From positions 1,922,001 to 1,986,000 of the forward strand of contig NW_025767302.1 in assembly GCF_003918875.1 (NCBI RefSeq): DNA of 64,000 nucleotides, in the 5' to 3' direction. This DNA comes from Haliotis rubra. Taxonomy: Eukaryota. Below the pieces are notes generated by a model. The model saw only the letters and a program-made list of their open reading frames with translations, was not told the origin of the DNA and did not search any database. This document shows, piece after piece, positions 3,174 to 58,800 of this stretch. Position numbers and translations under genes: made by a program. Position 1 is the first letter of the stretch. The number at the start of each line of letters is the position of its first letter.

Positions 3174-3224
3174 GAAACTCATTCATCATGGGCTGAAATC
3201 AGTTATTATGGCATCCAAGGGAGT

Positions 3225-4699
3225 TCATTGGCCTTTCCTCAGGGATAAAGCAATTGCAGCAACCCGGCCTTGGTCCTGAGCAAAGCGCATCTGAACAGCA
3301 TTGGCGTTTTGCTTGAGGATGGTCGGTGGAACATTATATTCTATTGTTGCCCAGAGATTGTCGGTGTCGTTGTTGCTTGGGTTGTGGAGAATGTAGTACG
3401 AGTGGAGATTTACTCCATTCATAGTTACAGAAACTGGAATATACTTGGCAGAATGATCAACGAAACTTACTGAAATGCGGAGTTTTGCTACCATAATGTG
3501 ATGAAGATCACTGCTGTGGAGCATGATGTTCATGTGAGCTGCTTTCCTGTTTATTATAACCAACATGTCGTCTCCATAATGCACACTTTCATAGACCAAG
3601 GGAACATGAGAAAATGTGTGACCTGTGGGAAACTGAAAGAAGCATGAAGATTCTGGAGGGACAGTCACCTGATTTCCATTGACATGAATAGGTACTTGCT
3701 TATCCAGTTGAGTGGCCCTCCTGTTATTGAGGTACAGACAGGTTGATGTCCCGTGGGTCAACCTTACCCATCCTTTGTCAAAAGCCAGTGTGACCTTAGC
3801 TTGGGCTGTGTCATAGTTGTGTAGCAGAACGGTTAGCATTTTGGAACTTGGTTCCACAAGGGCATGACTCTGTATCTGCCTCTCTGCCTGGTGGAACTGA
3901 CTCTCGGATCTGAGGAACTTCATACTGCTGGTGATGTTGTCCCACAGGTGGAAGGCCAGAGCTATGTCTCTCTCGTTTTTATTCTTGTCCAGGATACTGT
4001 AGTTGATGCTTTCTTGGCCTTGCCTGTTGCTGTAACTAAGAAGGAAGGACACAGCCCTGTCCACCACGTACCGAAGCTCAAGAAAGGTGAATATATTCGA
4101 GTTGTGAAGGTTGATGTAAGCCCAGTCCAAGAGGGTCGATGGTTTCTGGACATCGATGCCTGTGACCGTTGCTAGACCATGAGCGGAGAATATGATTGGA
4201 ACATCTTTTCCAGTCATCATATTAGCATATGTTTCCACAATGTCCACCGTCCCAACTAGCCTAGCCTCATTTGGGCCATAAAACCGATATCTGTTCCCCT
4301 GGACGACAAAGTGATTGAAAGGATGGAATGAAAAGAAGTCCAATAGGCCAAGGGACATGTTCATGAATTGCGTCATCCAGCTCCATTGACGAAAGTTCTG
4401 TTTATCAAAATAGGTTATTCCACCAGTAAAGGCAGGCCCGCCTATCTTTATTTGGGGATATATGGCTTTCACCTTCTTGGCCACAAGCTCGAATACAGTC
4501 ACTACGGTTGTCCAATTGACATCCAACTTCCACAGTGTGTTTGGCTCATTGATTGGTTCAAAATATGGAGGGACTGCGCCGTTAGAACCGTTGTATATTG
4601 CCTGGACGTGTAGAGATATGGTTTCCGCAGCAGCATCAAGATTGCTTGGAAAGTGACCCTTATGTGCAGATTTGTCCATCCAGTGAGGCCATAAGTTAC
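3225..4699 (-). CDS. GH86 beta-porphyranase/beta-agarase-like glycoside hydrolase, exon 3 (catalytic barrel and C-terminal beta-sandwich domains)
   Basis: Motifs YFEPINEP (acid/base NE), KIGG, LDFFSFHP, D-x-VE-x-Y, and a C-terminal LRIS..V.MNG..IE..N.V...F...GRV pattern resemble Bacteroidetes beta-porphyranase A. The AG acceptor at 4701-4700 is phase 1 and in frame with exon 2. The joined CDS is 1842 nt, 613 aa. Confidence 0.85.
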
Positions 4700-7028
4700 C
4701 TTTGGCAGGAAAACATGATTATGTAAAGAAATTCATTCCCTGAGATACTGATGTTTTGTTGATACCTCACAGGCGCGAGCTTTTTATATGTTATGACAGT
4801 AAATTAACTGTTTATATAATTTCACCACACGTTCTTCTTACCGAGTCACTTTCTCAGTTCGATACTTAAAAGCAATTTATTTAGCGTTGTCACAGACAAA
4901 ACTCAATGTCTTGTTTTATTGACACCTGTGTGTCTGCCTGCCTGTCTGCTAATGACAATATTTAATACACAACTGCGATCACTGACCTCATGCAATTTGA
5001 ACTTAACACCAATCAGGCTATACACCATAAACAAAATGCATTGATTTATGGCCCGAGTTCGGTCTCTGTCACATTATGTAATTACACAGACAGGCAGGTG
5101 TGATAGTTGAACACTTGACATGTTATGATGTCTATTGATTGCAAAATGTTATACACAAAAAATGAGCATGTATTTACAAAACCCAACATCTCTACATATA
5201 CACACACAATAAGCCGTGAGGGCGTACGCAAATGAACCAGCCGTTACACTTGAGTGCACACCCACCCGCTCTGACTGTGTTCGGTATCCCGGCTGCTTCG
5301 TTTCTTGGGAAGTAAACCGAGGTACACAATATTGCACTTTTGATTTGCGATTGTACGCTTATAATTTTGTTTATATGTTTTTTCATAACCAGCAATGTAT
5401 ATTATATGTCACGAATAAGTGATAATTGTGTTTTTAATTATGTTTGATTTTTTGGTTGCATGTGACCTTTAATGAAAGTTAGTGTTATGTGCATTTTAGC
5501 CAGATTTATACAAAATATTCCTGAATACAAAACAAATGTATATTACATCAGGCCATAAATCTTGTCACATTGTAACATCTTTAGATTTTCAACAGAAATA
5601 TATCTTTCTCACTGTCAACTATCCATAATTATTTGTGCCACTATAAGTATCTCCTTTTCAAACTTGCTTCTTATTCGCCGGCCAGAAAACCTCACATTTT
5701 GGACAAGAATGAAACTTAAATGCTTTCCCTCAGGCTGCAGAGCGTTAACGGGCTTGTCTGTTACGCACTGTCCGTTCTGTCCAAGTGTACTCAGTTTAGA
5801 TTATCAAATTATGTTCAGCCATCATGACACCTGAGGATGTTGAAGTATCAGGTGTTTGGATGGAAAGAATTTGAACGATGAAAGAAAAGTTACCACGTCC
5901 GTCTTGGAATCGTTCAGCATACAGTATCCATGAATGCCCCTTGTAGGATTCATTGTAGATGAAGATTTACAAGCTTGTCAGATCACCAAATACAAACATA
6001 CCGAGTCCCTTGGGTTGGCAGTGCCACTTGGGTCTGACAAATCATCATGATATTATTTCACAAGAGGAATATCCAAATACCTAGCTAAACTCCAGTTTCC
6101 ATGCAAATGGACCAGGTAGGACTAATGCATGATTGGTTCAGTCGCACCATCCAGATGTAGTAGATACTTACTGCCTAAAAGATCAGACCAAAAGGATGAT
6201 GATAAGCCAGACTGCAGCACCTCATTTGTTCAATGACTCTCTTGGGAAGGTTTTGGAAGAGTACACTTGGGCACGACGGACAGCTTTAATCATGCTATCA
6301 TCTTGGTAGCCAGATGCCAGAACGTACCAGCCCCTAACGATACATTCTAGCACTGACCTAAAGGAAGTTTTATGTTGCCAGAAGTATATAACAGTTGTTA
6401 TCATTGTTCGTATAACATCAGAAATAGTAACCCACTTATATGCCCCTTAAGTCAAAGTTAAACACCTGTCAGTAATTAAGGAACAGGTGGGTTTTTAGGT
6501 CAGATTATAAGTCAGTAATCCAACTCATCTACGGGTATTCTGCATCAAGCTGTAGATGTTGGAAAGAAGTGTGGTTTAGCCCATGCCCAAGTGGCTTTGG
6601 ATGAGATATGCTATCAGTGGCTCTAGTAAATACTGATTGTTTACACTGAAAATTACTTTTTGTAAAAGAATTTATAGTGCAGCACGTTTGAAATAGAGAC
6701 AAAATTTTGTTTAAGTAATTAGCAATGATAACTATTGTTTTATATTCCCATGTTTGATAAGGGGATTCATGAACCTATCTTTACGTTCATGGTCAGAATT
6801 GTGTAACCTCCTTATGTCATAAAGCTTTTGTCTCGTTAACTTGCATCATATTAGAAAAAAGCAAAGTTATACCTCTTAGTAGTAAATAAGTGAATACCTT
6901 TCTAAGATCTCAGGTTCTCAAGAATTACACCCATTTTGGGTTCACAGAGGAAAATTAGATGTGGAAGCCAAAAAAAAATCAGAAACATTTTGTAAAAGCA
7001 ATGAGATATGTAAGCTTCCTTAACCCAC

Positions 7029-7170
7029 CTTTCAGTTCAAGCATGATTGGTCTCTGTTTTCCATATCTATTCAGATTGTCGAGATATTTCTCAACTAAAT
7101 TGTGTTGAAGCTGCTTGTTTTGGAAGAACGCTGGATTCGGGTACCCTTTTCGGTGTGGATCTTCTGTCAC
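7029..7170 (-). CDS. GH86-like gene exon 2
   Basis: tttcgcatag|GTG ACA GAA...CTG AAA G|gtgggt, 142 nt. Phase 0 in and phase 1 out match both neighbouring exons (VTEDPHRKGYPNP...MLELK). Confidence 0.8.
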
Positions 7171-7345
7171 CTATGCGAAATGCCAACATTAACACAGTTT
7201 ATATACATGATACTGGGAAACTACATTGAAATAACAAAAGTGTAGATTCAGTGTATGACTACGCTAATTGATAGAAAGAACATTTCCGTTTTGAAATGTA
7301 AATTTACCAGGCCGAAAAATCACTGTCATTACGGTTTCTTATCAC

Positions 7346-7861
7346 AGTGAGTGAGTTTTTAGTTTTACTCCGAAGTGTTTAGCAATGTTCCAGCAATATC
7401 ATATATATTGTGTGTGGCCCTGTGCATAGAGCTCAGGTCACAAATCAGGTGAAGTTATGCAACGTTGAGATGGGTGGCGGTGTTTGGCAGTTTGGCTCCT
7501 GAGAGTTTCTGGGACTTAAGTCCCCACAACGAAGCATATGTGATACATGTGGCCTCACCTTAGGCAAATGAGTTTGTTGCCTAAGTTCACCCAGCAGAAA
7601 ATGGGTACCCGGTGGACTATTAACCTTCTAGCGCCTCACAGACAGCTTGAGTTAGCCGGCGTAATCATATCAATCAGATTGTTAACGCTATGAGCATTCA
7701 CCTAGTGAATGGAGTTTAGCGCATTATAAATACACTTAATATTATTATCACGGCGGGGGACACCAGACATGGGCTTCACACATTCTACCCATGTGGGGAA
7801 TTGAACCCGGGTCTTCGGCGTGACGGGCTAACGCTTTAACCACTAAGCTACCCCGCTGCCC
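7346..7861 (-). mobile_element. tRNA-derived SINE with (TCAC)n tail, split by a nested insertion
   Basis: The tail half (7346-7401) and head half (7746-7861) together rebuild the family seen intact at 17222-17386, including A/B-box-like motifs. Confidence 0.8.
7402..7750 (+). mobile_element. Nested SINE with 5S-rRNA-like segment, Deu/Nin-like core and L2-type tail
   Basis: GAAGTTATGCAACGTTGAG..ATGGGTG resembles molluscan 5S rRNA. It has a CACCCAGCAGAAAATGGGTACC core and an AGCGCATTATAAAT..(ATT)n tail, and is flanked by a TATCA duplication. Confidence 0.55.
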
Positions 7862-7910
7862 TGTCTTATCTCAGGGTGAATACTACCATGGTATGGCTGA
7901 AGACACGTAC

Positions 7911-8135
7911 CTTGTCAAAATAGCTTAAATCTGAATTCAGCCATCTTCCAGTGCGGGCTCCCGTTTTTTTCATGCTGTCTATAGTGCTGGGATTATCCAG
8001 GCCCATTTTACCATTCCACCTGTCAGGGTCGAAGTTGGTTCTTCCTCGCTGTACCAAATACTCTGGGTAAATGGTCACTGTATACCCTCTGACACAAGGA
8101 AGGGTACAGAGAGCGAGCACAATGGGTAGCAACAT
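7911..8135 (-). CDS. GH86-like gene exon 1 with signal peptide
   Basis: ATG followed by a hydrophobic signal peptide MLLPIVLALCTLPCVRG|YTV. 225 nt, ending GAC AAG|gtacgt. A TATA-like TTATAGAA lies about 55 nt upstream. Confidence 0.85.
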
Positions 8136-8449
8136 GTCGTCTAGCTGGTAGTTCTATCTTCTGTCAGTAGCTCGTTATGTCTGGGTTCTATAAGGAAGGC
8201 GTTCTGTCCCACTTGGTTTTATTTGCATTGTCACGATAAGATATTAACTTAGATATGCAACTGCATTACAGACTAGCATTCTATGGGCTTGTCAAAGCCA
8301 TATGGTTCCTCACAAAGTGTGTTGTCGTTCCAGCATTGAAAAAAAGCGACAAGACCATTGTTCATAATCAGAGTGAGTGAGTATAGTTTTACGCCGCACT
8401 CTACGGATGCCTATTAGGGCCACGCTACGCTATTATTCAGCGTCTTTTA

Positions 8450-8846: not shown

Positions 8847-11395
8847 ATGGCTAGTCCAGGCAGATCTGAAACTACAGATGCTACTCGCGCAGATGCAGTG
8901 AACATAAGTTTCTCTTTCTCATAAATTTCAGTGACAAGATCGGTTCCCAACATGCATAAATACAGGACAAGATACATGTTAAATACAGGTTTTCCTTTAG
9001 CAGTATTTGACTTTAGAATAAGACGGTAGCCTTATATTCTTTTTGCAGTTAGAACCGTGTTTGCAATTCATTTCCTAAGTACCGGCACGTATCATAATTT
9101 AACAGATATATGTGAGTGTTTAGCCCAGGACGTATAAAGGCGGTATAGAGTTTATTATGATCGTCCCGTCTAAGCAAACCGGTTTGCCACAAGCCCATGT
9201 TAAAGCATTTAGGAAACAACTCATCTAACTATGCCAAAGTGGGCTTTGTTTTAAATAATAACGTCATGACAACTTGTATTTCTCATATCTTGAGCAGGCT
9301 TTTTTATGCCGTCCAAGTGTGAAATATATCGAACCAATTGAACATATGTGACATACGTCTGGCAAAATAGAACCAGACGAGGTGATTGTTATCGCATGGC
9401 CGACTTTGGTATCACTCTAGTAATAAAACATTCATGAATACAATCAATAATTAGCCTTGTATGCACAATGAGAAACGACGTCATTGAATCCAATTTTACC
9501 ATTACAATTCAGGCTGTTTTCATGGGTCACATAAACTTTCAGTGTTTAATCTAAATTGTCTTTTCAGATTGAACAAGCAGAGATGGCTTCTCAGAAGAAA
9601 ATTTCCAAATGGAAGCAGAGTTTATTTGATCGTCTGCGCATCAAACTGAACCGACCATCGACAAGTGACGACCTAACAGATATAGGTCCACAAAGTCGAA
9701 ATGCTGTCAAACTGACAAAACAGGTGGAGACTGGGCTTATGAAATTCGACGAAAAGAAAATGATGTATACTCAAGTCCGAACTAAATCAGGAGGTGGTAC
9801 TCGGAATATATCGGTTCTGAAACAGTCAACTAGTTCAAGCTAAGAAGATCTTATTCGCAGAGGGACATTCCATAAAATTTGGACCCGAAACTGATTATGA
9901 GTTCAATGTCATGGACTATCAGTTTGTCATTCTGAATGAGGATGTCACTGTTCAGGATATGTCTGATCTTACTCGACTGACCAACCTGAGGTTTTATTTG
10001 GCGATGAAGAAGGTACAAGACACCACCACCAAAGATCCTGTTCCTGGTCATTGTGCCCAGAGTACCCATTCAAGACCGCAAACTTGGGGAGAAGCTGATC
10101 AAGATCAACCAGGACAACAAACGTTGGAACAAGGTCAACAGCATCAGCCACCAGGTCAACAGCATCAGCCACCGTGCTGGAATTCTAAACCACAGAATCA
10201 GGGGGATCAGCAGGATCATCAGGCACAAGCTGCAGGAAACACAGATGACCACAGTGATGATAACGATGAGTTACCAAATATCCTGCCTCTACATTCTGAG
10301 GTTGAACCATATTCAGTTGATATTGATCTCCTGGACAACTTCATTGCAGATCTTGAACACCAGACAGCACAAGCCAATGTCAGCCCCCATACCATACGTA
10401 TACACAGAGGACATGTCTTCCAGGAACTCAAAGAAAAATTCAAAGAAAAAACTTTCAATCAAAATAAGGATATTTTCAATTTCCAAATGATTTTGCCAAA
10501 TGGAGAAGTAGAGGTTGCCGAAGACATGCGAGATGCTTTAGTAGAGTTCTAGGATTCTTTCTTTGAACAGTGTTGTGTGGAAAGAGCTTGTAAGGTGCCA
10601 TTTATAAGGCATGATTATGACAGTGATGAATGGCTGGCATTTGCTTCCATTCTCTATTTCGGATGGAAGTGGCAGAACTACTTCCCCGTGAGCATAGCAA
10701 AGTCTTTTATGGCGTGTTGCATTTATGGCATGGATATATTTTCAACAACAGAAGAATCCCTTATACCGGAATACCTTTCCTTCCTTCCATGTTCAGAGGC
10801 TGGCATACTCAAGGCGTCCTTGGAAGGTGATTTTGTGGAGGAGGACGTTATTGATGTCCTCAGTGTCCATGAATGTAGAGGTCTGTCCACAAAAGAAACT
10901 CTCAAGAGGTTGATTGGCGAGATAGCTCACAAGGAGATGGTTCAGCAGCCAATGTATGTAAAGGGAGCATGGTTCGATAAACTGACTTTGTTGGGGTTCA
11001 GTCGTGGAGGAACATCTCTTGATTCACTGTATGACTCCCTCAGGCCAAACAATCGGAAAGTGATGAAGATGCTCTCATTTCCAGACGACATGTCCTTGCA
11101 ACAGAAAAGTACATCGGAGCTCCTCAGAAAATATGTCCGTGAACTGGAGAAAGATTATCTCGCCCGGTTTCTCAGGTTCTGCACTGGAGCCAACTTGTGT
11201 ATCACAGATGGTTATGGTCACCCAAAGCCAATCTACATTCGTTTCACAACACTATCAGGTCTGGCAAGGAGGCCAGTTGCTCACACTTGTGGACAAGTAC
11301 GTGAGCTGCCTGACCAATACGACAACTTCCTTGACTTCGTGAAGGAGTTCAACACGATCCTCGAGAGCGGTGTGTGGGTGATGGATTTTGTTTAG
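8847..11395 (+). pseudogene. G2E3-like HECT E3 ubiquitin ligase pseudogene (transposon cargo)
   Basis: HECT C-lobe FLRFCTGAN...RRPVAHTCG..LP..Y, plus IHRGHVFQEL and KVPFIRHD. Disabled by TAA at 9841-9843, a frameshift before 9911, TAG at 10550-10552 (EF*, normally W), and an apparently mutated donor (AAC|ataagt at 8904) after a putative first exon 8847-8903. Acceptor at 9567. Confidence 0.8.
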
Positions 11396-20809: not shown

Positions 20810-21910
20810 ATGTCACGATCCACCGGTGCATCGCCGGCAAGATTTGCACGATACGATGCACGATTCATTTGTATTAGTATCGACATACATCGATTATTAT
20901 TTTGATATAGCACATTATATCACACAACACTTTTGTTGGAAAATACAAACAAAACAGTGAAGTTAACACATTTTCCATTGTATTTTGTTATACAGAACAT
21001 AAGATATGACTTGGTGAGTGTGGTTGATGATACTTGGCTGATACTCAGTCTTCCCTTCTCTAGTAATCTCTTCCACGTATCGTATTGTGACCTCAGTGTC
21101 GCGATACGTAATACTATCGTATTGTTACCTCAGTATCGCGATACGTAATACTATCGTATTGTGACCTCAGTGTCGCGATACGTAATACTATCGTATAGTT
21201 ACCTCAGTATCGCGATACGTAATACTATCGTATTGTTACCTCAGTGTCGCGATACGTCTCGTGTCGTGACCTCAGTATCGCGATACGTATCGTATTGTGA
21301 CCTCAGTGTCGCGATACGTAATACTATCGTATTGTTACCTCAGTGTCGCGATACGTCTCGTGTCGTGACCTCAGTATCGCGATACGTAATACTATCGTAT
21401 TGTTACTTCAGTGTCGCGATACGTAATACTATCGTATTGTTACCTCAGTATCGCGATACGTAAGACTATTGTATTGTTACCTCAGTGTCGCGATACGTCT
21501 CGTGTCGTGACCTCAGTATCGCGATACGTATCGTATTGTGACCTCAGTATCGCGAAACGTATCGTATTGTGACCTCAGTATCGCGATACTTATCGTATTG
21601 TGACATCAGTATCGCGATACTTATCGTATTGTGACATCAGTATCGCGATACGTAATACTATCGTATTGTAACTTCAGTGTCGCGATACGTCTCGTTTCGT
21701 GACCTCAGTATCGCGATACGTATCATAATGTGACCTCAGTATCGCGATACTTATCGTATTGTGACCTCAGTGTCGCGATACGTATCGTGTTGTGACCTCA
21801 GTATCGCGATACGTATCGTGTCGTGACCTCAGTGTCGCGATACGTATCGTGTTGTGACCTCAGTATCACGATACGTATCGTATCGTGAGGCACCTATGTC
21901 GTGACATCCT
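20810..21910. mobile_element. Non-autonomous TIR element whose subterminal repeats expanded into a satellite
   Basis: ATGTCACGA at about 20810 and TCGTGACAT at about 21899-21907 are inverted. CGATAC-type subterminal repeats occur at both ends. Confidence 0.5.
21076..21890. repeat. CpG-rich minisatellite with palindromic GTATCGCGATAC core (about 30/37-bp variants)
   Basis: More than 20 copies of GTGACCTCAGT(A/G)TCGCGATACGT[AATACT]ATCGTATT. Confidence 0.95.
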
Positions 21911-21954
21911 CAGTAATAACTACAGACCGAGTGTTTATGTTCTTCAGATACAAG

Positions 21955-22866
21955 ATGTCAAGTCCCACTGGGTCTTTGCAGCAAAACGTGCCAAGGCACT
22001 CACACTACCAAACATACAACTCCCGAGTTGAATCATTTGTTTCCTGGCCTGGACGGTATGTCCCGAAAACACCCGAGCAACTGGCAACAGCCGGGTTCTT
22101 TTACATCGGGTCAGCTGACCGGGTCACGTGTTTCCAGTGCGGGATAACTCTGAGAGACTGGGGGGAAGAACATGACCCTGCGGCTGAGCATCAGAGATAC
22201 TCGGAACACTGTCCGTTCATCAAGCGGCTAGAGGAGCAGGAAGGCAGGATAGATGACCTGAATTTTGGACCTCCACTGTCTAACATTGACGAAACCAACG
22301 GAGTGAGTCAAAGACCTCCACTGTCTAACACTGACGAAACCAACGGAGTGAGTCAAGGACCTCCACTGTCTAACACTGACGAAACCAACAGAGGTAGTCA
22401 AAGACGAGCAGCGGGTGCACCGAAAACCAACAATATTATCTCCAACTTTAATTGTCTGGACATCAGAAAACAACTTAAGTTGATCGTAGGATTGTTTTTC
22501 TCAGATCCGTTGGTTGATAAACAAGACCAAACACCTCAAGACGTGTCAGCTTTAGAAGTGAAAATTTCGACTTTGAAACGATCGGGCGAAGACAGTGCTA
22601 CTTTCCTTAAGACCACTGACCAAAATGAGAAGGAAAACCCTGAAAGTATGTTTCCTTGCAATGCTAATGCACGGAACAGCGGCACAAGGGAACAATTAGG
22701 AATGTGCAGATTGTGCACAAAGAAGGATGTTTCCGTCATCTTCTTACCTTGTGGTCATTTCGTTACATGCAAGTCCTGCGCAAACAAAGTTGACACATGC
22801 ATGACGTGTAAAATGGACATTCTGGGACGGACAAACGCCGCTGTATGCAAGTCTCCAGTCATGTAG
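21955..22866 (+). CDS. Inhibitor of apoptosis (BIR-RING) paralogue 1
   Basis: BIR (R..SF..WP...LATAGFFYIGSADRVTCFQC...W...EH...CPF) and C3HC4 RING (CRLC..FLPCGH..C..C..C..C). The ATG at 21955 follows a ttcttcag acceptor. A possible in-frame intron ends at 22504. Confidence 0.9.
   Translation: MSSPTGSLQQNVPRHSHYQTYNSRVESFVSWPGRYVPKTPEQLATAGFFYIGSADRVTCFQCGITLRDWGEEHDPAAEHQRYSEHCPFIKRLEEQEGRIDDLNFGPPLSNIDETNGVSQRPPLSNTDETNGVSQGPPLSNTDETNRGSQRRAAGAPKTNNIISNFNCLDIRKQLKLIVGLFFSDPLVDKQDQTPQDVSALEVKISTLKRSGEDSATFLKTTDQNEKENPESMFPCNANARNSGTREQLGMCRLCTKKDVSVIFLPCGHFVTCKSCANKVDTCMTCKMDILGRTNAAVCKSPVM
22270..22404 (+). repeat. Coding 45-nt tandem repeat x3 (PPLSN(I/T)DETNGVSQ(R/G)) in the IAP1 linker
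   Basis: Three 15-aa units are visible in both DNA and translation. Confidence 0.9.
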
Positions 22867-28326: not shown

Positions 28327-29607
28327 ACAAATAACACTAATTAGGTGTGTACTCCTCTAAAGTGCATACAGAATAATAGTACGATTCGTAAGAGGCTAAA
28401 ACTTAGGCAATAACGTTGATCATGGTTGTTTCTTTGTCACTCCTCCCTACAGGCACTGTAGTCAAACAGACAACAGGGCTGATTTGTCTAACCATGCCTT
28501 GAAGCCACTCGGAGAAAGTTGAAATCAAAGGATTAATCCATGATCAGCGATGATTGCATAGAGATGTTGGGCTTGTGTGAATCTATTAATAGATATACCT
28601 ATGGTGTGTTCAGAATTACTCCCTGTTGGAATATTGTTGAATGTGCCATTTAACAACAAACAAAATATAATATATATAATTGAATGTTAAGGAGGTTACC
28701 AACCTACGATTAGATATCAAATTGTATCAAATATACCGACATATACTGGTAACCACCAGTGATGAGAAGTCTGTGACTCCTCTATTTGATGTTGAGTCAT
28801 TTGTACGTAGGCGAGACTTTGTCGCAACACTATTGATTGCAAACAAAAGGGAGGCAAGTGCTATTTGCCTGGCAAGTCAGCCATTGCGTGAGCATTATTC
28901 TGAATGGCAGCTGTAGCTTGTCAGCAGCTGAATCAGCATTTTCCACATAAAGTCATGTGTAATAATAGCGTCGTAGGTTACTTTATTTCTGGACAAGACA
29001 TAACCTCCACAGTTAGCTAAGACCGACAGTATTTTATAACAAATCACAATGTGAAATAGTTTCAAACAGCAGAACGGTCGGCCGGGTGAGTACAGGTGTC
29101 TGGTTCCGTGTCCAGATCCACAACGTCTGTGATAATCCACAGGGATATTCAGCCTCACATGTCTCATCCACACAAAGTATAAAGACTGAGGTGTTAGTGA
29201 AATACATCCACTTGCTCTCGTAAACTATACTGTAACGACTATACTGTGCTGGGTTACCTCTCTTAGCCGTGCAAGGATCAGCAGACCTGTGGTACAAATA
29301 TTTCTAAATAGTACAGAATACCCTGGCGTCAAACAGTTGTAAACGGCTGAAACACTGTGTGTGTACAGTGTATATTAGCAAAGAATGACCACACCACTTT
29401 CAAAATATGTACACATAACGACTGCAAAAACAGTTTTCTCCATTGACGTATTTTGTGAAGAGCCATTGTCTTCGCTCGTGTCAGTGCAGATTAATTTTTC
29501 ATTCTTTTGCTTCTTCATGAATTTTCACAACCGTCTTTGAGATGATTCTTGAAGGGATCTTGTCGTACAAAGCCTATTTATTTGTTTCAGGTTATCAAAC
29601 ATCGAGC

Positions 29608-30537
29608 ATGGACAAGAACGTGACCATGTCATCGTTTAACCCCTTACAGGCCAAGTCGAATAACCATACAGAAAGCAGGATAGAAGTTTGCACAGTTGCT
29701 CCAAAACATCCAAAGTACCAAACATACATCTCACGACTCGACTCATATGTGGCCTGGCCTATACGGTATGTCCCGAAAACACCCGAGGAGCTTGCATCAG
29801 CCGGGTTCTTTTACATCGGGTCAGCTGACCGGGTGACGTGTTTTCATTGTGGAATAACCTTGAGAGACTGGGAAGCAGAACACAACCCTGTTGCAGAACA
29901 CAAAAGGTATGCCCCGAAGTGCGAATTCACATCATCACATACACGTGTTGAGGTTCTTGGAGGTGATAAGGAACAGGAGGAGAGTGAAGATTCATCTATG
30001 GTAATTGATGAGAATGCCGACTCAAACATTGACCTTCATTTTACGCAAGCATCTAATGACCTTCACCTTGGTGGTGGTGCTTGTGCGGCTTCTGTGGACC
30101 CTAACACTTCTGTTGTGGAAGAAAACCCATCTATAGTCATGGAGGGATGTGATAAATCCGTGGACACTTCAGCCTTATGTGAAAATCTACAGACTCTATC
30201 AATCAAAGTGTGTGACAGAGAGATGGAAAATATACCATCTGAATCTAACATGGATATGGAGATAACATCAGACATCACAGGTTCTCATGGAAGTCAGAAA
30301 GAGGAATCTAAAATCTGTCAGCCCAAACCCGTGAGCAGGAAACTGATGCTCTTGAGGGCCGAGAACAGACGTCTCAAAGAACAAAGCACGTGCAGAATGT
30401 GCAAAAACAACCCCGTGTGCATCCTCTTCTTGCCCTGCGGTCATCTCGTCACGTGTTCTGATTGCGCAGACAAGGTCGACGCGTGTGTGACGTGTGGGAA
30501 GACAATCCTTGGAACAGTAAAAACCTTCATTATTTGA
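29608..30537 (+). CDS. Inhibitor of apoptosis (BIR-RING) paralogue 2
   Basis: BIR (RLDSYVAWP..ASAGFFYIGSADRVTCFHC..EH..CEF), an ENRRLKEQ helix, and a RING ending GTVKTFII. The ATG follows the tttgtttcag acceptor at 29590. 309 aa. Confidence 0.92.
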   Translation: MDKNVTMSSFNPLQAKSNNHTESRIEVCTVAPKHPKYQTYISRLDSYVAWPIRYVPKTPEELASAGFFYIGSADRVTCFHCGITLRDWEAEHNPVAEHKRYAPKCEFTSSHTRVEVLGGDKEQEESEDSSMVIDENADSNIDLHFTQASNDLHLGGGACAASVDPNTSVVEENPSIVMEGCDKSVDTSALCENLQTLSIKVCDREMENIPSESNMDMEITSDITGSHGSQKEESKICQPKPVSRKLMLLRAENRRLKEQSTCRMCKNNPVCILFLPCGHLVTCSDCADKVDACVTCGKTILGTVKTFII

Positions 30538-36649: not shown

Positions 36650-37665
36650 CTCCTGACACAGTGCAATGTGGCCACTGTGGTCTTCAGCTGCCTCTGACCC
36701 ACCAGCTCGACAATGTCCTGCAGGAGCACCAGAGGTCCAAACCCAATTGCCCTTTCATCAGCAAACTGTCCAACCCTACCCCAAGGACAGCCCCCAAGCA
36801 TCCTGAATACAGGGAGGCTGCTGCTAGGCTTGATTCTTTCACATCATGGCCGACAGCATATGTACCTCAGTCCCCGGAGAGTCTTGTAGCTGCTGGCTTC
36901 TACTACATCGGCTCAGCCGACAGAGTCACATGTTTCCAGTGTGGAATAACCTTGAGGGACTGGGATGTAGGTCACGACCCCATGACTGAGCACCGAGAAT
37001 ATTCTCCCAATTGTGAGTTCATCAATAAACCCGACTTGAACCAACTTGGAGTTGCCCGTAGGGTAATATCTGACCTTGACATTGATGTTGCCGCAAGTGC
37101 ATCAATTGGTAACCTTGACCTTCAAAGTGATAGCAGTGGTGTGCCCAATACAGATGGTAACTTTGATGATGTTGAGAAGGAGGCACGGGAAATGGGGTTC
37201 ACTTCCGATAAGATCCGTAGGGCGAAAGACATATTTTGGAGGAGAAATGGAAGGTCCTGTGGAACGATCTCTGATCTTGTAGACTGTATCTTAACTCTGG
37301 GCAATGACAAGTCTAATAATGAAGAGAAATTAGCCACCAAACTTCCATCTGTTGTTTCAAATTGTCAAAGTACTTTCAGAGATGAAGCTCATTTGTCATC
37401 TCCCGTCAAGGAAATGGTCAAGTCTGATTCTGAAATTAAGCCAACAAAATCTCCAGATACTAAGGTCAAGAATGCTCACCTTTTGTTAGAGAATAAACGT
37501 CTTCGTGAGCAGAGGCTGTGTCGAGTCTGTCGCCAGAGGGACGTCTGTACATTGTTCCTCCCCTGTGGCCATCTTGTTACATGTGAAACATGCGCAGAAG
37601 CAGTTGATGATTGCGTTCTTTGTAACAAGACTATCATGGGAACAGTAAAGACATATCTCACGTAG
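36650..37665 (+). CDS. IAP paralogue 3 exon 2 (BIR1 C-half, BIR2, UBA-like, RING)
   Basis: The ttttccacatccag acceptor is phase 1 and in frame. Contains CGHC..EH..CPF, a second full BIR, an EMGF UBA-like motif and a RING ending GTVKTYLT. The joined CDS is 397 aa. Confidence 0.92.
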
Positions 37666-41527: not shown

Positions 41528-41984
41528 CTGGAATGAAAATTAATCTTTTTAATTGATCATCCTTAGAGAATAGTCTGTTCATTAACAGACTTACTGAAAA
41601 CTATATTATATAAGTATTGGAGTAGTTAAAGCACTAATGTCTGACAGATGCACTATAGGTACATTACGTGGATCAGTAAGTGATCTTGGTAATGCCCTTT
41701 TTTGTGCTACATTCCTTAAAGACCTCCAAATATCCAGAAGTGTTTAATAAATGTTAACTAATGACTTTAATTGATGTTTATGTTACAGTCTGAAATTATA
41801 CGATATATAAACCATTTAGGTTCCACGACATGCTGATTCAGCAGCTCTCAATGTATGCATTGATTTAAATGCTTCTGTATATATGTTATTTCAATAAAAC
41901 AAGAACTACAATAATTCTTGTTGATACATCTATGAATATATGTGGTGAGACTGATCATATCTTAAGAGAGTTGTATGTTTTGTA

Positions 41985-42467
41985 AGTGAAATGATTAAAG
42001 AAATGCGTGGATTTGTGACATGATTGCATGAAATGCACGGATTTGTGAAATGATTGAAGAAATGCACGGATTTGTGAAATGATTGAAGAAATGCACTCGG
42101 ATTTGTGAAATGATTGAAGAAATGCACGGATTTGTGAAATGATTGAAGAAATGCACTCGGATTTGTGAAATGATAGAAGAAATGCACGGATTTGTGAAAT
42201 GATAGAAGAAATGCACGGATTTGTGAAATGATTGAAGAAATGCACTCGGATTTGTGAAATGATTGAAGAAATGCACGGATTTGTGAAATGATTGAAGAAA
42301 TGCACTCGGATTTGTGAAATGATTGAAGAAATGCACGGATTTGTGAAATGATAGAAGAAATGCAGGGATTTGTGAAATGATTGAAGAAATGCACTCGGAT
42401 TTGTGAAATGATTGAAGAAATGCACTCGGATTTGTGAAATGATTGAAGAAATGCACTCTGGATTTGT
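41985..42467. repeat. 29/31-bp minisatellite
   Basis: About 16 copies of GAAATGATTGAAGAAATGCAC[TC]GGATTTGT. Confidence 0.95.
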
Positions 42468-42840
42468 AAGGTGAATGGACTCCGTGTTTGTAAGACTGAT
42501 TTACTCATATATCTTCTAAAACTGAAAATAAAAATAAGCATTTTCTTTCATTATAGTAGTCATGATAATCATTGGCGATTAAGTTAAAGATGGCATTCAA
42601 GATTTGTTGTAAAACTGATTTACCATGTGAACACCTGCAGTTATCATGGTTATAATATGGTATTGAGTAACGGACACTAGTGTTTCTCTACAGTTACTCT
42701 ACATTTGTTGAGTTCTGCCAGATATTACTGTCGGGTGGTTTAAGGAATCCTCTCAATGTCTTGAGCAACTAACTCAATATGAAATCTGAAGCTCGTCAGT
42801 CAGTTCTGATCATCTCACTGATGGTGATCATGGTGATATA

Positions 42841-44320: not shown

Positions 44321-44947
44321 TTACCTGTTAACACAATGCAACCCAATTGCCAAAAGTAGATACACATGTATATCTTATTTCCTTTTGAAATGTCCTGTAC
44401 TATAGTGTCCTGACTAATGCCCAACACAAAACGCATTATTTTTAATATGGTCCACGATAACAAGTGGAGATAACCCATGTGAGGTTTTAGTTTATATATT
44501 ATAAACAACCACAAACAATTGTTTTAACTTTAAGGCAAGCTCCAGTGTAAGGAATACAATGAAAGGTCACAAATCACTGAAAACTGAAGTGTATGCAAGA
44601 AAGAAAACAAATATATATATCTTTAAAAATGTATTAACAAATGTACCAAATAAACAATGGAAGAAACATGACTTTTAAAAGTAGCACTGGTTGCAAGCTT
44701 CAGGATGTGATTTATCCTGTGTTTGTGAACTTGTAACTCTCATATTCAGATCCTTATCACCATGATCACAGATAGATGTGTTGGATGTGTTGTGTCAGCA
44801 ATGTTTTGACAGTCACACAGTCAAATTCAGTGCCTGATGTCCTAATCCACTGGTTGATCTCTTCTACATATCACATGTATTTGTGTCTTCTACATATCAC
44901 ATATATTTGTGTCTTCTACATATCACATATTTGTGATATATACAGGT

Positions 44948-46786
44948 TGGTATCTCCGGAAGTCACCAGACATCGCACTCCACTTGGTATCTCCAGAAGT
45001 CACCACACATCGCACTCCACTTGGTGTCTCTGGAAGTCACCAGACATCGCACTCTACTTGGTGTCTCCAGAAGTCACTAGACATCGCACTCCACTTGGTG
45101 TCTCCGGAAGTCATCAGACATCGCGCTCCACTTGGTGTCTCCGGAAGTCATCAGACATCGCGCTCCACTTGGTGTCTCCGGAAGTCACCAGACATCACAC
45201 TCCACTTGGTGTCTCCTGAAGTCACCATACATCACACTCCACTTGGTGTCTCCGGAAATCACCAGACATCGCACTCCACTTGGTGTCTCCGGAAGTCACC
45301 AGACATCGCACTCCACTTGGTGTCTCCGGAAGTCACCAGACATCGCACTCCACTTGGTGTCTCCGGAAGTCACCAGACATCACACTCCACTTGGTGTCTC
45401 CGGAAGTCACCACACATCGCACTCCACTTGGTGTCTGCGGAAGTCACCAGACATCGCACTCCACTTGGTGTCTCCCGAAGTCACCAGACATCGCACTCCA
45501 CTTGGTGTCTCCGGAAGTCACCAGACATCACACTCCACTTGGTGTCTCCAGAAGTCACCAGACATCGCACTCCACTTGGTGTCTCCAGAAGTCACCAGAC
45601 ATCGAACTCCACTTGGTGTCTTCCGAAGTCACCAGACATCGAACTCCACTTGGTGTCTTCGGAAGTCACCACACATCGTGCTCCACTTGGTGTCTGCGGA
45701 AGTCACCACACATCACACTCCACTTGGTGTCTCCGGAAGTCACCACACATCGCACTCTACTTGGTGTCTGCGGAAGTCACCACACATCGCACTCCACTTG
45801 GTATCTCTGGAAGTCACCAGACATCGCACTCCACTTGGTGTCTCCGGAAGTCACAAGACATCGCACTCCACTTGGTTTCTCCGGAAGTCACCACACATCG
45901 CACTCCACTTGGTGTCTGCGGAAGTCAACACACATCGCACTCCACTTGGTGTCTCCAGAAGTCACCAGACATCGCACTCCACTTGGTGTCTCCGGAAGTC
46001 ACAAGACATCGCACTCCACTTGGTGTCTCCGGAAGTCACCACACATCGCACTCCACTTGGTGTCTCCGGAAGTCACCAGACATCGCACTCCACTTGGTGT
46101 CTCCGGAAGTCAACAGACATCGCACTCCACTTGGTTTCTCCGGAAGTCACCACACATCGCGCTCCACTTGGTGTCTCCAGAAGTCACCAGACATCGCACT
46201 CCACTTGGTGTCTCCGGAAGTCACCACACATCGCACTCCACTTGGTTTCTCCGGAAGTCACCACACATCGCACTCCACTTGGTGTCTCCAGAAGTCACCA
46301 GACATCGCACTCCAATTGGTGTCTCCGGAAGTCACAAGACATCGCAGTCCACTTGGTGTCTCCAGAAGTCACCAGACATCGCACTCCAATTGGTGTCTCC
46401 GGAAGTCACAAGACATCGCAGTCCACTTGGTGTCTCCAGAAGTCACCAGACATCGCACTCCAATTGGTGTCTCCGGAAGTCACCAGACATCGCACTCCAC
46501 TTGGTGTCTCCAGAAGTCACCAGACATCGCACTCAACTTTGTGTGTTCGGAAGTCACCAGACATCGTGACTCCAATTGGTGTCTCCGAAGTCACAAGACA
46601 TCGCGAGTCCACTTGGTGTCTCCAGAAGTCACAGACAGACAATTGGGTCACCAGACATTGGGCACTCCATGTTTAGGTCTTCTGTCAATCACCAGACATC
46701 GCTCTCCACACGTTGGTGTCTCCGGGAGTCATCAGATATAGTTTCGCTCTAAACGTTTGGGGTTGTCTGTAAATCACCACACATCA
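44948..46786. repeat. 37-bp satellite forming the CTC1 3' flank/UTR
   Basis: About 48 copies of TTGGTGTCTCCGGAAGTCACCAGACATCGCACTCCAC, degenerate at 46530-46786. Confidence 0.97.
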
Positions 46787-55800: not shown

Positions 55801-58800
55801 CCTGTCTGGAGCACACTGTACCACCCCACATTGCCCTGAAACAGCAGCACAGCAGGCTGAGCAGCCCCACTTCCTGGACAACCACCTACAGCTGCTCCTG
55901 TACAACTTCCTCCTCCACTGCTTCCTTCTGAGCAAAATTCTTTATGAACAGGTTGTTGATGAACAGTTCTCTCTATGGAACTATTTCTGGGAGAGGATCC
56001 ACTGTCAGCACTTTTTCTTGACAGAGCTTCAGGCTTTGATGTGTTCAAATCTATCTTACAAGGATGAAGATTCAACGATGATGTATTTACATTTTCAAAG
56101 CCCTGGTTCTCTTTTAGCTTGATATATGCACTGCTCTGGTGGTTTTTTTACAACTTGTGAGATTACCACTCTGCATATTTCTGATTCTGCCTATGTCATC
56201 ATTTCTAGATGAGTTTGCTTGTCCTATCAAATATCCAAGAACACAGAACCTAAGCTTTGGGGACTCCTTCCTGCTGAGAGTAGTCAGAGACTCCTTGTGG
56301 GAGATGTAGACCAACTGAGACTCAGATGATTCTTCAGTATGTGATTCATCCTTAATGTCATATTCATTCTGTCTCTTCCTCTTTGGTGGAGGAGCTGATG
56401 AAGTCCTGTCTTTCCTTTCAAGGAATTCTTTCTCCTGTGCCAGTTGATAAACGGAGCCTTCACCTGACAACCTGGATGGAAGGTCTATCAGCACACAGTC
56501 TGTAAGGGAGATCTGGAGGTACAGAACATGTCTGGATCTGGTCACATATTTGGTGTCAATGTGGTAGGAGTTGGGAACATCAATATTGAGGAACCGCTCA
56601 GCAATCCGCTTGTACCTGGTGACACAAATGATGCTGCCAAGCAGGTTGGGCTGTACCAAGGGACATGTTAAAGCATGCCCCAGCTTAGGGCTGACACAGG
56701 CTGGACAACAAACATGGCCGCTTGGTGGATTGGAGGAGCAGACGGCAAGGTCAACTGATCCTGTAGCATCCTGTAGCTGGAGTCTTCCTGTCACATGACT
56801 GGACTGGAGGTATCCAATCAGAAGCTGGAAAGAAGAAAATGTCACCATCATAACCTTGCCACACATGCCTCGATCCCTTCCTCATTGTATACACACATAG
56901 GGCTACAGTATTATACAACAGTAACAGATGGAATCATCTGCATTATATCACACAACCATCCCTTCACTCTAAAGTTTCACACACACAACAGATATGGATG
57001 GAATATCCAGCTATATCTCACCTTGCCCTGACTCTTCTCCACAGTCTCGGACACAGGGTTCCAGTAGAGTTGCTGGTTCAGATCAGACACAGATAGTTGG
57101 GATCCGTAGTACTTCTGTCGAAGGTCGGTCAGGTCACGTGACTTCTCAGAAAGATCATCAGTTTCTCTGCTGATACTGACAAGGTCAGGGATTCTCGGTT
57201 TTGACTGGAAACAAAGCCCCATTTCATCACAATGCCAAAAATACCCTCATCATCTTCACTAGTGTTTAGTCTCTGAAACACTAAAACTCAGAGAAACAAT
57301 TACAACTGTAATTGAAAAGGACCCTCTGTGGGAGGCTAGTTTGCTTCATTCAAACTTTTTTTTATTACAAGCAGTGATGGGCTGAAGGGAAATAATATGG
57401 TTCTGGGACTGAGGGACAGCTCTTTACAAAGAATTCACAACATCTGGGGTCAATATTGTCAAAAGACAATAATTGCAAATTCTTTAAATTTTGCTGTAAT
57501 TATAAGCTGACTCCTAGACTCTCACCTAGATGCTTGGTTTATCAGGGTCATACCTCAGCTTGTTGGTTTCATCAAAGTGAATGTCACTATAATCAAAATC
57601 ACTTGATATGCTGTGACACCTCTCAAAACGGTGTTAAACCCAAATTACTCACTGTGGAAAAATACATTTAAGCCCCAAATATTAATTGATAATTCTTTAA
57701 TGAGCAGGTTACAGGATATCCAACTTTCTCACTGGATTAGAAGGCAGTTACATGACCATGAAACTGACGCTGAAACTGATGCCCCCCGAACCAACATTCA
57801 TACATTTAGGGCCTCTGTGTCTAAAAGTGAAAGTCAATTTAGAATTATGAAAATACCCCCCCTACCTGCCCTCTACCAACGCAGCAGGCATGTGGAGATT
57901 CCAGGAACTCTTGCAGCAGATTTCTGGGTTCCTCCTGTAGCCATGGGCAACAGCTGCTGTTCAAGATGACAGGGATGAGAGGGATGGTGCCAGACAATGG
58001 CAGGTCACTGCAGACAGAAACATATTCTTTCTGACATAACAAACAGCCAACTTAAGGACCAAACATGCTTAAAGGCAGACAAGGTTTAAGCTCATTGGAA
58101 GTTTGAACAAATATTATTCAACCGGAAAACCTCATTGTCTGACTGAAGACCCATGTTTTCAGACATACAGTATATCCTTTCATAGGAGAAAGAAAACCTG
58201 AAGTACGTGGGGCCATGTGTTAGCTAATTACATGTCTACAACATGGCAGAATATGGAGCTCAACATCACTCAAGTTATTTCCCTTTGATTAAGATATCAT
58301 GTAGTCAACAACTGTAAACTGACTACTGCAACCATTCAACTGCTGAGAGTGGAGTGAGAAGCATTGAGGAGGGGAGGTGCAGGGTAGGGGATGGTGAAGG
58401 CAAGGGAGCAGAGTGAGTGTCGTTAATGGAACACTGAAAGTCTTCCACATCACATGTGAACCATATGAGAGTGTCCTCCAATCTGTTCAATATGGACCTG
58501 AAAGAATGTAGCTCTCCTCAATGTTTTTTAACATAATACTTGATCAGAAAGGTCATAAAAAGTGTAAACAAGTATAAGACAGCAGAAAGTTTCTGTTTGT
58601 CAAATATCATGTCTAGAACCAGATATGATTCTTGTGAGCACCTTACAGAGAGATTATTGTCAAAATCATTTATGCAATATCTACAGAATTTGTGGTTTCA
58701 GAAGAGAAGGCTTACAAAGAACATGTAAAAGTTAATATGGATGACGGATTATGACAACATTACCCAGAATACTTGACCTTTGTCATGAGAAAATAAGCAA

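What the first reader, a model, noticed from the sequence alone, without database searches (positions are those of the whole stretch)
4176..4200. Presumed catalytic nucleophile Glu replaced by Ala: a pseudo-enzyme or algal-galactan lectin?
Seen: the strand-7 segment reads P-I-I-F-S-A-H-G (Ala codon GCT at 4182-4184). The acid/base NEP is intact and the 1842-nt frame has no lesions. Established: clan GH-A retaining enzymes carry the nucleophile Glu at the end of strand 7, which I recall as P-x-x-(I/V)-(S/T)-E-(Y/F)-G in GH86, and Glu-to-Ala there abolishes normal hydrolysis. GCT is two changes from a Glu codon, so a single miscall is unlikely. Inference: a hydrolase-dead secreted binder of sulfated galactans (gut lectin, food or settlement-cue sensor), analogous to chitinase-like lectins, or an enzyme with a non-canonical mechanism.
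Basis: partly seen in the sequence, partly recalled or inferred. Interest (0 to 1): 0.8.

Follow-up and report, generated by a model that had tools for sequence, protein, structure and literature searches.

The report
Abalone GH86-like protein lacking its nucleophile
A blacklip abalone gene encodes a secreted protein built like a bacterial red-seaweed agar/porphyran-cutting enzyme (family GH86), but the glutamate that does the cutting is an alanine; one conserved clade of paralogues shares this, so it is probably a sugar-binding or unconventional protein and not a broken gene.

Summary
A three-exon minus-strand gene (8135..7911, 7170..7029, 4699..3225; 1842 nt, 613 aa) is identical to the H. 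rubra protein XP_046545280.1. It reads P-I-I-F-S-A-H-G at 4199..4176, with Ala295 encoded by GCT at 4184..4182. Ala295 aligns with Glu322 of BuGH86, the published catalytic nucleophile. The acid/base motif N173-E174-P175 is intact.

The genome holds at least 86 copies of the large exon. Fourteen have Ala, one fragment has Asp, and the rest have Glu. The Ala proteins form one clade (support 100/98) with two deep branches, present in H. rubra, H. asinina and H. rufescens. All of them also change the strand-6 Tyr to Phe.

dN/dS is 0.115 against the H. asinina orthologue, and the clade median is 0.21 against 0.26 for Glu-bearing paralogues. This is therefore a selected protein, not decay or a sequencing error. 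Among representative relatives from 1.84 billion protein clusters, 139 have Glu and only this abalone clade has Ala.

Best reading (0.55): a secreted GH86-derived protein that cannot hydrolyse by the canonical mechanism and probably binds galactan. A non-canonical enzyme remains possible (about 0.2). No biochemistry exists. The scan had already found the abalone GH86 arrays on other contigs of this genome.

The parts
7911..8135 (-). Exon 1 (75 codons). ATG at 8135..8133. Encodes a predicted signal peptide (MLLPIVLALCTLPCVRG) and the start of the barrel.
   Evidence: tblastn of P0001 and P0002; sequence with GT donor after 7911; spliced translation equals P0021
7029..7170 (-). Exon 2 (142 nt). 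AG acceptor before 7170 and GT donor after 7029; ends in phase 1.
3225..4699 (-). Exon 3 (1475 nt including the stop at 3227..3225). Encodes residues 123-613: most of the (beta/alpha)8 barrel and two C-terminal beta-sandwich domains.
   Evidence: Pfam BPA_C 2.2e-08; AF2 model
4542..4550 (-). N173-E174-P175, the acid/base motif at the end of strand 4. Intact.
   Evidence: Glu is present in all 160 relatives that cover this column. DSSP strand 168-173.
4317..4325 (-). H248-P249-F250, the strand-6 H-x-Y motif with Tyr replaced by Phe.
   Evidence: Tyr in all 71 Glu-bearing family members and Phe in all 15 Ala-bearing ones. Codon change TAC to TTC.
4176..4199 (-). P290-I-I-F-S-A295-H-G297, the strand-7 motif. 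Ala295 (GCT, 4184..4182) stands where the catalytic nucleophile Glu should be.

Best explanation
The gene encodes a secreted, fully folded GH86-derived protein that has lost the enzymic nucleophile (Glu to Ala295) and the strand-6 Tyr (to Phe250). It keeps the acid/base Glu174 and about 89% of the family's near-invariant residues. Without a carboxylate on strand 7 it cannot form the covalent glycosyl-enzyme intermediate of the retaining clan GH-A mechanism, so it is very probably inactive as a canonical beta-galactanase. It has been kept under purifying selection in several copies since before the abalone species split, so it must do something else. The most likely role is binding a red-algal galactan or similar glycan in the retained cleft without cutting it. 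That would make it a lectin-like pseudo-glycosidase, comparable to chitinase-like lectins or the GH16-derived glucan-recognition proteins of arthropods. Shown here: the substitution, its register, its clade distribution, the selection and the fold. Inferred: loss of hydrolysis, glycan binding and the biological role.
For: The register of Ala295 against the BuGH86 nucleophile comes. PMC5849685 calls E322Q 'an inactive nucleophile mutant'. That mutant still bound agaro-oligosaccharide across subsites -3 to +2. The AF2 model has pLDDT 89 and pTM 0.89, with Ala295 inside strand 291-302 and Glu174 just after strand 168-173. The top Foldseek matches are the three solved GH86 enzymes, at TM 0.75-0.81 over the full length. 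The paralogue table gives 14 Ala, 1 Asp and the rest Glu among 86 copies. The Ala rows form one clade, with SH-aLRT 99 in the quick tree and 100/98 under LG+C20. dN/dS is 0.115 against the H. asinina orthologue (dS 0.34). The A1 subclade median is 0.21 against 0.26 for Glu-bearing paralogues. Of 63 positions at least 97% conserved in the Glu members, each Ala subclade changes 7. Only Y250F, E295A and T495V are changed in both. No acidic residue specific to the Ala clade appears on the active-site face. D360 and E365 are shared with the Glu-bearing sister clade, and D288 sits at the N-terminal start of strand 7. Among 146 relatives that cover the column, 139 have Glu and 7 have Ala, and all 7 belong to this clade. 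The protein starts with a signal-peptide-like N-terminus. One small run covers exons only, and one of its contigs appears to run from exon 1 into exon 2.
Against: No activity or binding data exist for any molluscan GH86-like protein, so even the Glu-bearing paralogues are only presumed enzymes. Glu174 and Asn173 are strictly retained in all 15 Ala members across a deep split (path about 1.25 changes per site). That could equally mean that acid catalysis is still used. I could not superpose coordinates, so a carboxylate reaching the nucleophile position from another loop is not excluded. The strand-6 Tyr is not a strict requirement: five Glu-bearing representative clusters have Phe or Ser there. 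The evidence for expression is thin (one probable RNA run, and its contigs do not cover the Ala codon).
Confidence: 0.55

Rival explanations
1. It is still an enzyme with a non-canonical mechanism. Glu174 would act as the general acid, and the nucleophile would come from elsewhere. One source is the substrate itself, by neighbouring-group participation (for example a 2-acetamido group, as in GH18, GH20, GH84 and GH85, where an Asn/Asp-Glu pair suffices). Other sources are a bound anion or water in the cavity left by Ala (inverting hydrolysis), or an acceptor sugar (transglycosylation).
For: N173-E174 is invariant in all Ala-clade members despite deep divergence. Purifying selection is as strong as in Glu-bearing paralogues. 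56 of 63 near-invariant positions are kept in each subclade. From general knowledge, Glu-to-Ala nucleophile mutants of retaining glycosidases can be chemically rescued by azide or formate and can act as glycosynthases.
Against: No candidate general base or new acidic residue specific to the clade was found on the active-site face. Known GH86 substrates, as far as I know, carry no participating group at C2. The Tyr that normally accompanies the nucleophile is lost as well, as expected if the whole nucleophile apparatus became dispensable. All 139 other representatives keep Glu.
Confidence: 0.22
2. It is a non-catalytic protein whose role does not lie in binding dietary glycans. It could be a partner or regulator of the active paralogues (as alpha-lactalbumin is for galactosyltransferase), a decoy or inhibitor aimed at microbial enzymes, or an immune pattern-recognition protein.
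For: The protein is secreted, conserved and multi-copy. GH-derived pseudoenzymes with roles of this kind are known (general knowledge). The locus lies beside IAP-type immune or apoptosis genes in the window, and an IAP-type gene also flanks the H. asinina orthologue. That proximity is weak evidence.
Against: Nothing here points to a protein partner. The residues that are kept are those of the sugar-binding face (E170, N173, E174, H248, conserved Trp residues).
Confidence: 0.12
3. It is an artefact or a dying gene: a sequencing or assembly error, a misaligned motif, or a recent pseudogene.
For: Some family copies are pseudogenes with stops (L004, L011, L013, L046).
Against: The GCT codon is confirmed by independent contigs. 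It is two changes from GAA or GAG. It is shared by three species and about 14 copies. The CDS is intact and identical to the annotated protein. dN/dS is 0.115-0.23. The motif register is fixed by 139 homologues and by PDB entries.
Confidence: 0.02

Closest known systems
GH86 beta-agarases and beta-porphyranases (BuGH86 5TA1/5TA0, Aga86A_Wa 8H97, BpGH86A 4AW7)
   Same: Full-length homology (profile E 1e-43 to 1e-29). Same three-domain fold at TM 0.75-0.81. Same N-E-P acid/base motif, and the strand-6 His is kept.
   Different: The nucleophile Glu (BuGH86 E322) is Ala, and the strand-6 Tyr is Phe. The gene is animal-encoded with two introns. Sequence identity to the bacterial enzymes is only about 18% in the structural alignment. 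No activity is known.
Glu-bearing GH86-like paralogues of abalone and other molluscs (for example H. rubra L010, H. asinina P0007, Mytilus P0009, chiton P0011)
   Same: Same three-exon gene structure, same length, same signal peptide, 35-47% identity. The nearest Glu-bearing clade is the direct sister of the Ala clade.
   Different: They keep S-E-[YF]-G and H-x-Y. The window's clade has S-A-[HY]-G and H-x-F.
Glycosidase-derived pseudoenzymes: chitinase-like lectins (GH18), arthropod beta-1,3-glucan recognition proteins (GH16 domain), Klotho KL2 domain (GH1 with the nucleophile replaced). Recalled from general knowledge, not tested here.
   Same: The hydrolase fold is intact, one catalytic carboxylate is replaced, and the protein is secreted and kept by selection.
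   Different: A different GH family and fold details. Here the nucleophile is lost and the acid/base is kept, which is the reverse of chi-lectins. A binding function is established for those proteins and unknown for this one.

Membership tests
GH86 (CAZy sequence family; characterised members are retaining beta-agarases and beta-porphyranases) | Significant full-length sequence similarity to characterised GH86 proteins | tested here: met
   phmmer E 1.2e-10 to 5ta1. Family profile E 1.2e-43 (8h97), 2.8e-43 (5ta1) and 9.7e-29 (4aw7). Pfam BPA_C above its cut-off.
GH86 (CAZy sequence family; characterised members are retaining beta-agarases and beta-porphyranases) | (beta/alpha)8 barrel followed by two beta-sandwich domains | tested here: met
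   AF2 pLDDT 89 with the expected pattern of secondary structure. Foldseek's top 7 hits are all GH86 at TM 0.75-0.81.
GH86 (CAZy sequence family; characterised members are retaining beta-agarases and beta-porphyranases) | Acid/base Glu in N-E-P at the end of strand 4 | tested here: met
   N173-E174-P175
GH86 (CAZy sequence family; characterised members are retaining beta-agarases and beta-porphyranases) | Nucleophile Glu in [ST]-E-[YFH]-G on strand 7 (BuGH86 E322) | tested here: not met
   Ala295. By descent and fold this is a GH86 homologue, but it is not a canonical GH86 hydrolase.
GH86 (CAZy sequence family; characterised members are retaining beta-agarases and beta-porphyranases) | Hydrolysis of beta-1,4 links in agarose or porphyran | not testable with these tools
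Glycosidase-derived pseudoenzymes and lectins | A catalytic residue replaced in an otherwise intact fold | tested here: met
Glycosidase-derived pseudoenzymes and lectins | Maintained by purifying selection across species | tested here: met
   dN/dS 0.115-0.23 in subclade A1, including H. asinina and H. rufescens sequences
Glycosidase-derived pseudoenzymes and lectins | Expressed | tested here: inconclusive
   Run X6 covers exons but not the unique parts of the introns, and has a contig that probably joins exon 1 to exon 2. The kind of run is not on record.
Glycosidase-derived pseudoenzymes and lectins | Binds its glycan without cleaving it | not testable with these tools
   Indirect only: the BuGH86 E322Q mutant still binds substrate (PMC5849685).

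The most novel reading that the evidence does not exclude
The Ala clade is a natural nucleophile-less glycosidase that still catalyses chemistry with Asn173 and Glu174 alone. Candidate mechanisms are substrate-assisted cleavage of a glycan with a participating group, anion- or water-mediated inverting hydrolysis, or transglycosylation. This would be the first clan GH-A family member, and an animal one, to have switched mechanism by losing its nucleophile.
Probability: 0.15. Interest if true: 0.85.

Novelty: new variant of a known kind. Interest (0 to 1): 0.6.

Why it matters
All characterised GH86 enzymes are bacterial. An animal-encoded, hugely multiplied GH86-like family in a red-seaweed grazer does not appear in the papers I could search. 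Within that family, one old clade has discarded the catalytic nucleophile yet stays under selection. It is the only such case among about 146 representative relatives from 1.84 billion protein clusters.

If it is a binder, it would be a new animal lectin type for red-algal galactans, of interest for abalone feeding, aquaculture diets and glycan probes. If it still catalyses, it would be a natural experiment in mechanism switching in clan GH-A. Either way it offers a matched set of Glu and Ala paralogues for biochemistry.

Tried and rejected
1. A single 1842-nt open frame. Rejected: the frame upstream of 4718 has stops, and the CDS is spliced from three exons.
2. Miscall or misassembly. Rejected.
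3. Misalignment of the motif. Rejected.
4. Recent pseudogene. Rejected by dN/dS and conservation across species.
5. Two independent Glu-to-Ala losses joined by long-branch attraction. The quick tree raised a warning. The mixture-model tree still gives one clade at 100/98, so I accept a single origin, though A1 and A2 use different Ala codons (GCT and GCC).
6. A compensating acidic residue. I scanned for Asp or Glu conserved in the Ala clade and absent elsewhere. Only D288 is specific to the clade, and it lies at the wrong end of strand 7.
7. The Asp in copy L036 as an evolutionary intermediate. Rejected: L036 is a truncated copy nested inside subclade A2 (91% identical to L011), so Asp (GAC) is derived from Ala (GCC).
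8. RNA evidence. No run on record as RNA holds the stretch. X3-X5 proved to be DNA because their contigs cross the introns. Only X6 looks like RNA.
9. Literature. Searches for GH86, porphyranase or agarase together with abalone, mollusc or Haliotis found only papers on gut bacteria. The PNAS 2012 BpGH86A paper is not held.
10. Copy number inflated by uncollapsed haplotypes. Only 6 pairs of the 66 intact copies are at least 97% identical at nucleotide level, and none reaches 99%.

Full report
OBSERVATION. The finding lies in a minus-strand gene. The only long open frame over it runs 3225..4718. tblastn with the annotated Haliotis proteins P0001 and P0002 shows two more exons upstream. Reading the borders gives exon 1 at 8135..7911, exon 2 at 7170..7029 and exon 3 at 4699..3225, with GT/AG borders. 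Together they make 1842 nt. The spliced translation (613 aa) is identical to P0021 = XP_046545280.1, 'uncharacterized protein LOC124255410' of Haliotis rubra.

The segment 4199..4176 translates to PIIFSAHG, with Ala295 encoded by GCT at 4184..4182. N173-E174-P175 lies at 4550..4542. Contigs from three DNA runs cover 4142-4572 and differ from the window only at 4374 and 4447, so the codon is not an assembly slip. These runs may derive from the assembly's own specimen.

WHICH RESIDUE IS IT? phmmer against PDB sequences aligns 'PIIFSAHG' with 'PLMISEYS' of BuGH86 (5ta1) and with 'PLMISQYS' of 5ta0, the E322Q mutant. Pluvinage et al. 2018 (PMC5849685) call E322Q 'an inactive nucleophile mutant'. 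They also show that it still binds agaro-oligosaccharide across subsites -3 to +2.

A profile of 33 mollusc family members matches the three solved GH86 enzymes over their full length, at E 1.2e-43 (8h97), 2.8e-43 (5ta1) and 9.7e-29 (4aw7), in the same register. In that alignment E-v-i-N-E-p, H-x-Y and i-S-E-y-G line up.

An AlphaFold2 model of P0021 is confident (mean pLDDT 89, pTM 0.89). It places Glu174 just after strand 168-173 and Ala295 within strand 291-302. Its seven best Foldseek matches in the PDB are all GH86 chains (TM 0.75-0.81). The next-best hits are other clan GH-A families such as GH30, GH39, GH51 and GH79, at TM below 0.5. I could not superpose coordinates residue by residue, so the equivalence rests on sequence and profile alignment. 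That alignment is unambiguous at this motif.

HOW UNUSUAL IS IT? The genome is 1.378 Gb, and the best protein hits name Haliotis rubra. A six-frame search finds at least 86 matches to the large exon, mostly in tandem arrays on contigs C2249, C164, C2468, C1213, C415, C968 and C791. I fetched all of them and tabulated the two catalytic motifs.
- Four copies read F-S-A-H-G (subclade A1). These are the window gene; its tandem neighbour L002 = P0001, which lies just before the window; L003; and the broken copy L004.
- Ten copies read C/S-S-A-Y-G with N-E-V (subclade A2).
- One truncated copy reads S-D-Y-G.
- All the others read [ST]-E-[YF]-G.

Sixty-six copies have an intact large exon, and only six pairs are at least 97% identical at nucleotide level. 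The count is therefore not mainly uncollapsed haplotypes.

A full HMMER scan of 1.84 billion cluster representatives found only 177 relatives at E no greater than 1e-3. Aligned to the family profile, 139 have Glu at the nucleophile column and 7 have Ala. All seven are the Haliotis proteins of this clade (P0001-P0004, P0006, P0021, P0022). The acid/base Glu is present in all 160 that cover it.

EVOLUTION. A tree of 86 proteins puts all 15 Ala rows on one side of a branch (SH-aLRT 99) but warned that two long branches meet. A careful search on 40 rows under LG+C20+F+G4 keeps the Ala rows as one clade (100/98). Its sister is a Glu-bearing Haliotis clade (L010, P0005, P0007, P0008; 99/97). The outgroup was Mytilus and chiton sequences.

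Subclades A1 and A2 sit on long stems (0.54 and 0.60, against 0.39 for the sister). The window-to-A2 path is about 1.25 changes per site, against 0.085 to the H. asinina orthologue P0022. The loss is therefore far older than the split of these abalone species. Ala is GCT in A1 and GCC in A2, while Glu is GAA or GAG elsewhere.

The three-exon structure is shared by the H. asinina and H. rufescens genes of the Ala and Glu clades.

Nei-Gojobori dN/dS on the large exon is 0.115 for the window gene against its H. asinina orthologue (dS 0.34), and 0.13-0.23 across A1 in the family-wide alignment (0.115-0.23 in the A1-only alignment). For comparison, one Glu-bearing orthologue pair gives 0.135. The medians are 0.21 for A1, 0.35 for A2 and 0.26 for 118 Glu-bearing paralogue pairs. 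The protein is thus as constrained as its presumably catalytic relatives.

WHAT ELSE CHANGED? Of 63 positions at least 97% conserved among the 71 Glu-bearing members (exon 3 part), A1 changes seven and A2 changes seven. Only three are changed in both: E295A, Y250F and T495V.

Tyr250 belongs to the strand-6 H-x-Y motif, which is conserved in the bacterial enzymes as well. In clan GH-A enzymes generally, this Tyr hydrogen-bonds the nucleophile. That is established knowledge of the clan and was not tested for GH86 here. Its joint loss suggests that the whole nucleophile apparatus became dispensable. The caveat is that five Glu-bearing representative clusters also have Phe or Ser there.

E170, N173, E174, H248 and the conserved Trp residues are kept.

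I looked for a replacement carboxylate. D360 and E365 (strand 8 to helix 8 loop) are also present in the Glu-bearing sister clade. The only acidic residue specific to the Ala clade, D288, lies seven residues before Ala295 at the start of strand 7, which is the far face of the barrel.

EXPRESSION. No run on record as RNA holds the stretch. Runs X3-X5 are DNA, because their contigs cross the introns. The small run X6 has contigs on exon 3 (3193-3762, 3984-4158, 4205-4407) and exon 1 (7909-8037), and none on the unique intron sequence 5534-6981. Its 163-nt exon 1 contig has 34 letters left over. At the same depth (3.9), a difference is reported at 7155 inside exon 2. I read this as a spliced exon 1-exon 2 contig, and so as transcription. 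That is an inference: the joint itself was not among the rows shown, and X6 does not cover the Ala codon.

INTERPRETATION. A retaining clan GH-A glycosidase needs the strand-7 carboxylate to form the glycosyl-enzyme intermediate. With Ala there, canonical hydrolysis should be lost or reduced by orders of magnitude. That follows from established enzymology, and the BuGH86 E322Q mutant is inactive (PMC5849685).

Long-term purifying selection, several intact copies, a signal peptide and a preserved sugar-binding face point to a working secreted protein. My best reading (0.55) is a lectin-like GH86 pseudo-glycosidase that binds red-algal galactan or a related glycan.

The strict retention of Asn173 and Glu174 keeps a non-canonical catalytic mechanism alive (about 0.2). 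A role through protein partners or immunity is possible (about 0.1). Error or decay is excluded.

In evolutionary terms the protein belongs to GH86. As a functional member, a retaining beta-galactanase, it fails one defining feature.

NOVELTY AND CONTEXT. Pseudoenzymes derived from glycosidases are a known kind. A GH86-derived one, in an animal, is not known in the papers I could search. Earlier follow-ups in this scan had already described the abalone GH86 arrays on other contigs (s1-320397, s1-335031). A first-stage note had flagged the same Ala in the neighbouring paralogue (s1-339781). I confirmed the neighbour's Ala independently.

What this report adds is the clade-wide picture:
- a single ancient origin;
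- the paired Tyr-to-Phe change;
- selection as strong as in the Glu-bearing paralogues;
- uniqueness among all detectable relatives.

Noticed in passing
G000 contigs C2249, C164, C2468, C1213, C415, C968, C791 and others (loci L005-L086): At least 86 matches to the large GH86-like exon occur in this 1.38-Gb genome, mostly in tandem arrays. Sixty-six are intact. The search tool states that its counts are lower bounds. This is a very large expansion for a family otherwise known from bacteria.
   Followed up: partly
L036 (G000:C968:52840-53880): A truncated copy nested in Ala subclade A2 (91% identical to L011) carries Asp (GAC) at the nucleophile column where its relatives have Ala (GCC). It is a derived single-base change in a fragment, not an intermediate.
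   Followed up: yes
L003 (C2002) and L004 (C2278): L004 reads identically to L003 for its first 399 residues, including upstream non-coding sequence. It then loses the frame and has 2 stops. It is either a broken duplicate or an assembly duplicate of the A1b gene. It is annotated as the 514-aa protein P0003.
   Followed up: partly
window 21901-22866, 29542-30537, 36661-37665 (+): Three single-exon IAP-type genes (BIR domain plus C3HC4 RING). A BIR+RING gene also flanks the H. asinina orthologue of the window gene (L087 18958-19908).
   Followed up: partly
window 4629-5533, 7344-7886, 8249-8400: The introns and the 5' flank of the gene hold very high-copy repeats. Summed contig depth there is 1e4 to 6e5, against 15-60 in unique sequence in the same DNA runs.
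   Followed up: no
window 10577-11392 (+), 41933-42541 (-), 56117-56866 (-), 44909-46741 (+): Exon-like pieces with weak HECT, HECW1-helix and CTC1 (telomere CST subunit, 1.2e-08) matches. There is also a 610-codon frame with overlapping long frames on the same strand, probably low-complexity sequence, whose Pfam hits have no stretch that is significant on its own.
   Followed up: no
P0028, P0031, P0032, P0033, P0091 (representative relatives, origin unknown): These Glu-bearing GH86 relatives have Phe or Ser in place of the strand-6 Tyr, so that Tyr is not indispensable in the wider family.
   Followed up: no
window 3480-3648, 4374, 4447, and the intron 5599-7183: The contigs of the public DNA runs differ from the window at many single bases (about 38 in 2 kb of intron). 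This level fits allelic heterozygosity or a different individual.
   Followed up: no
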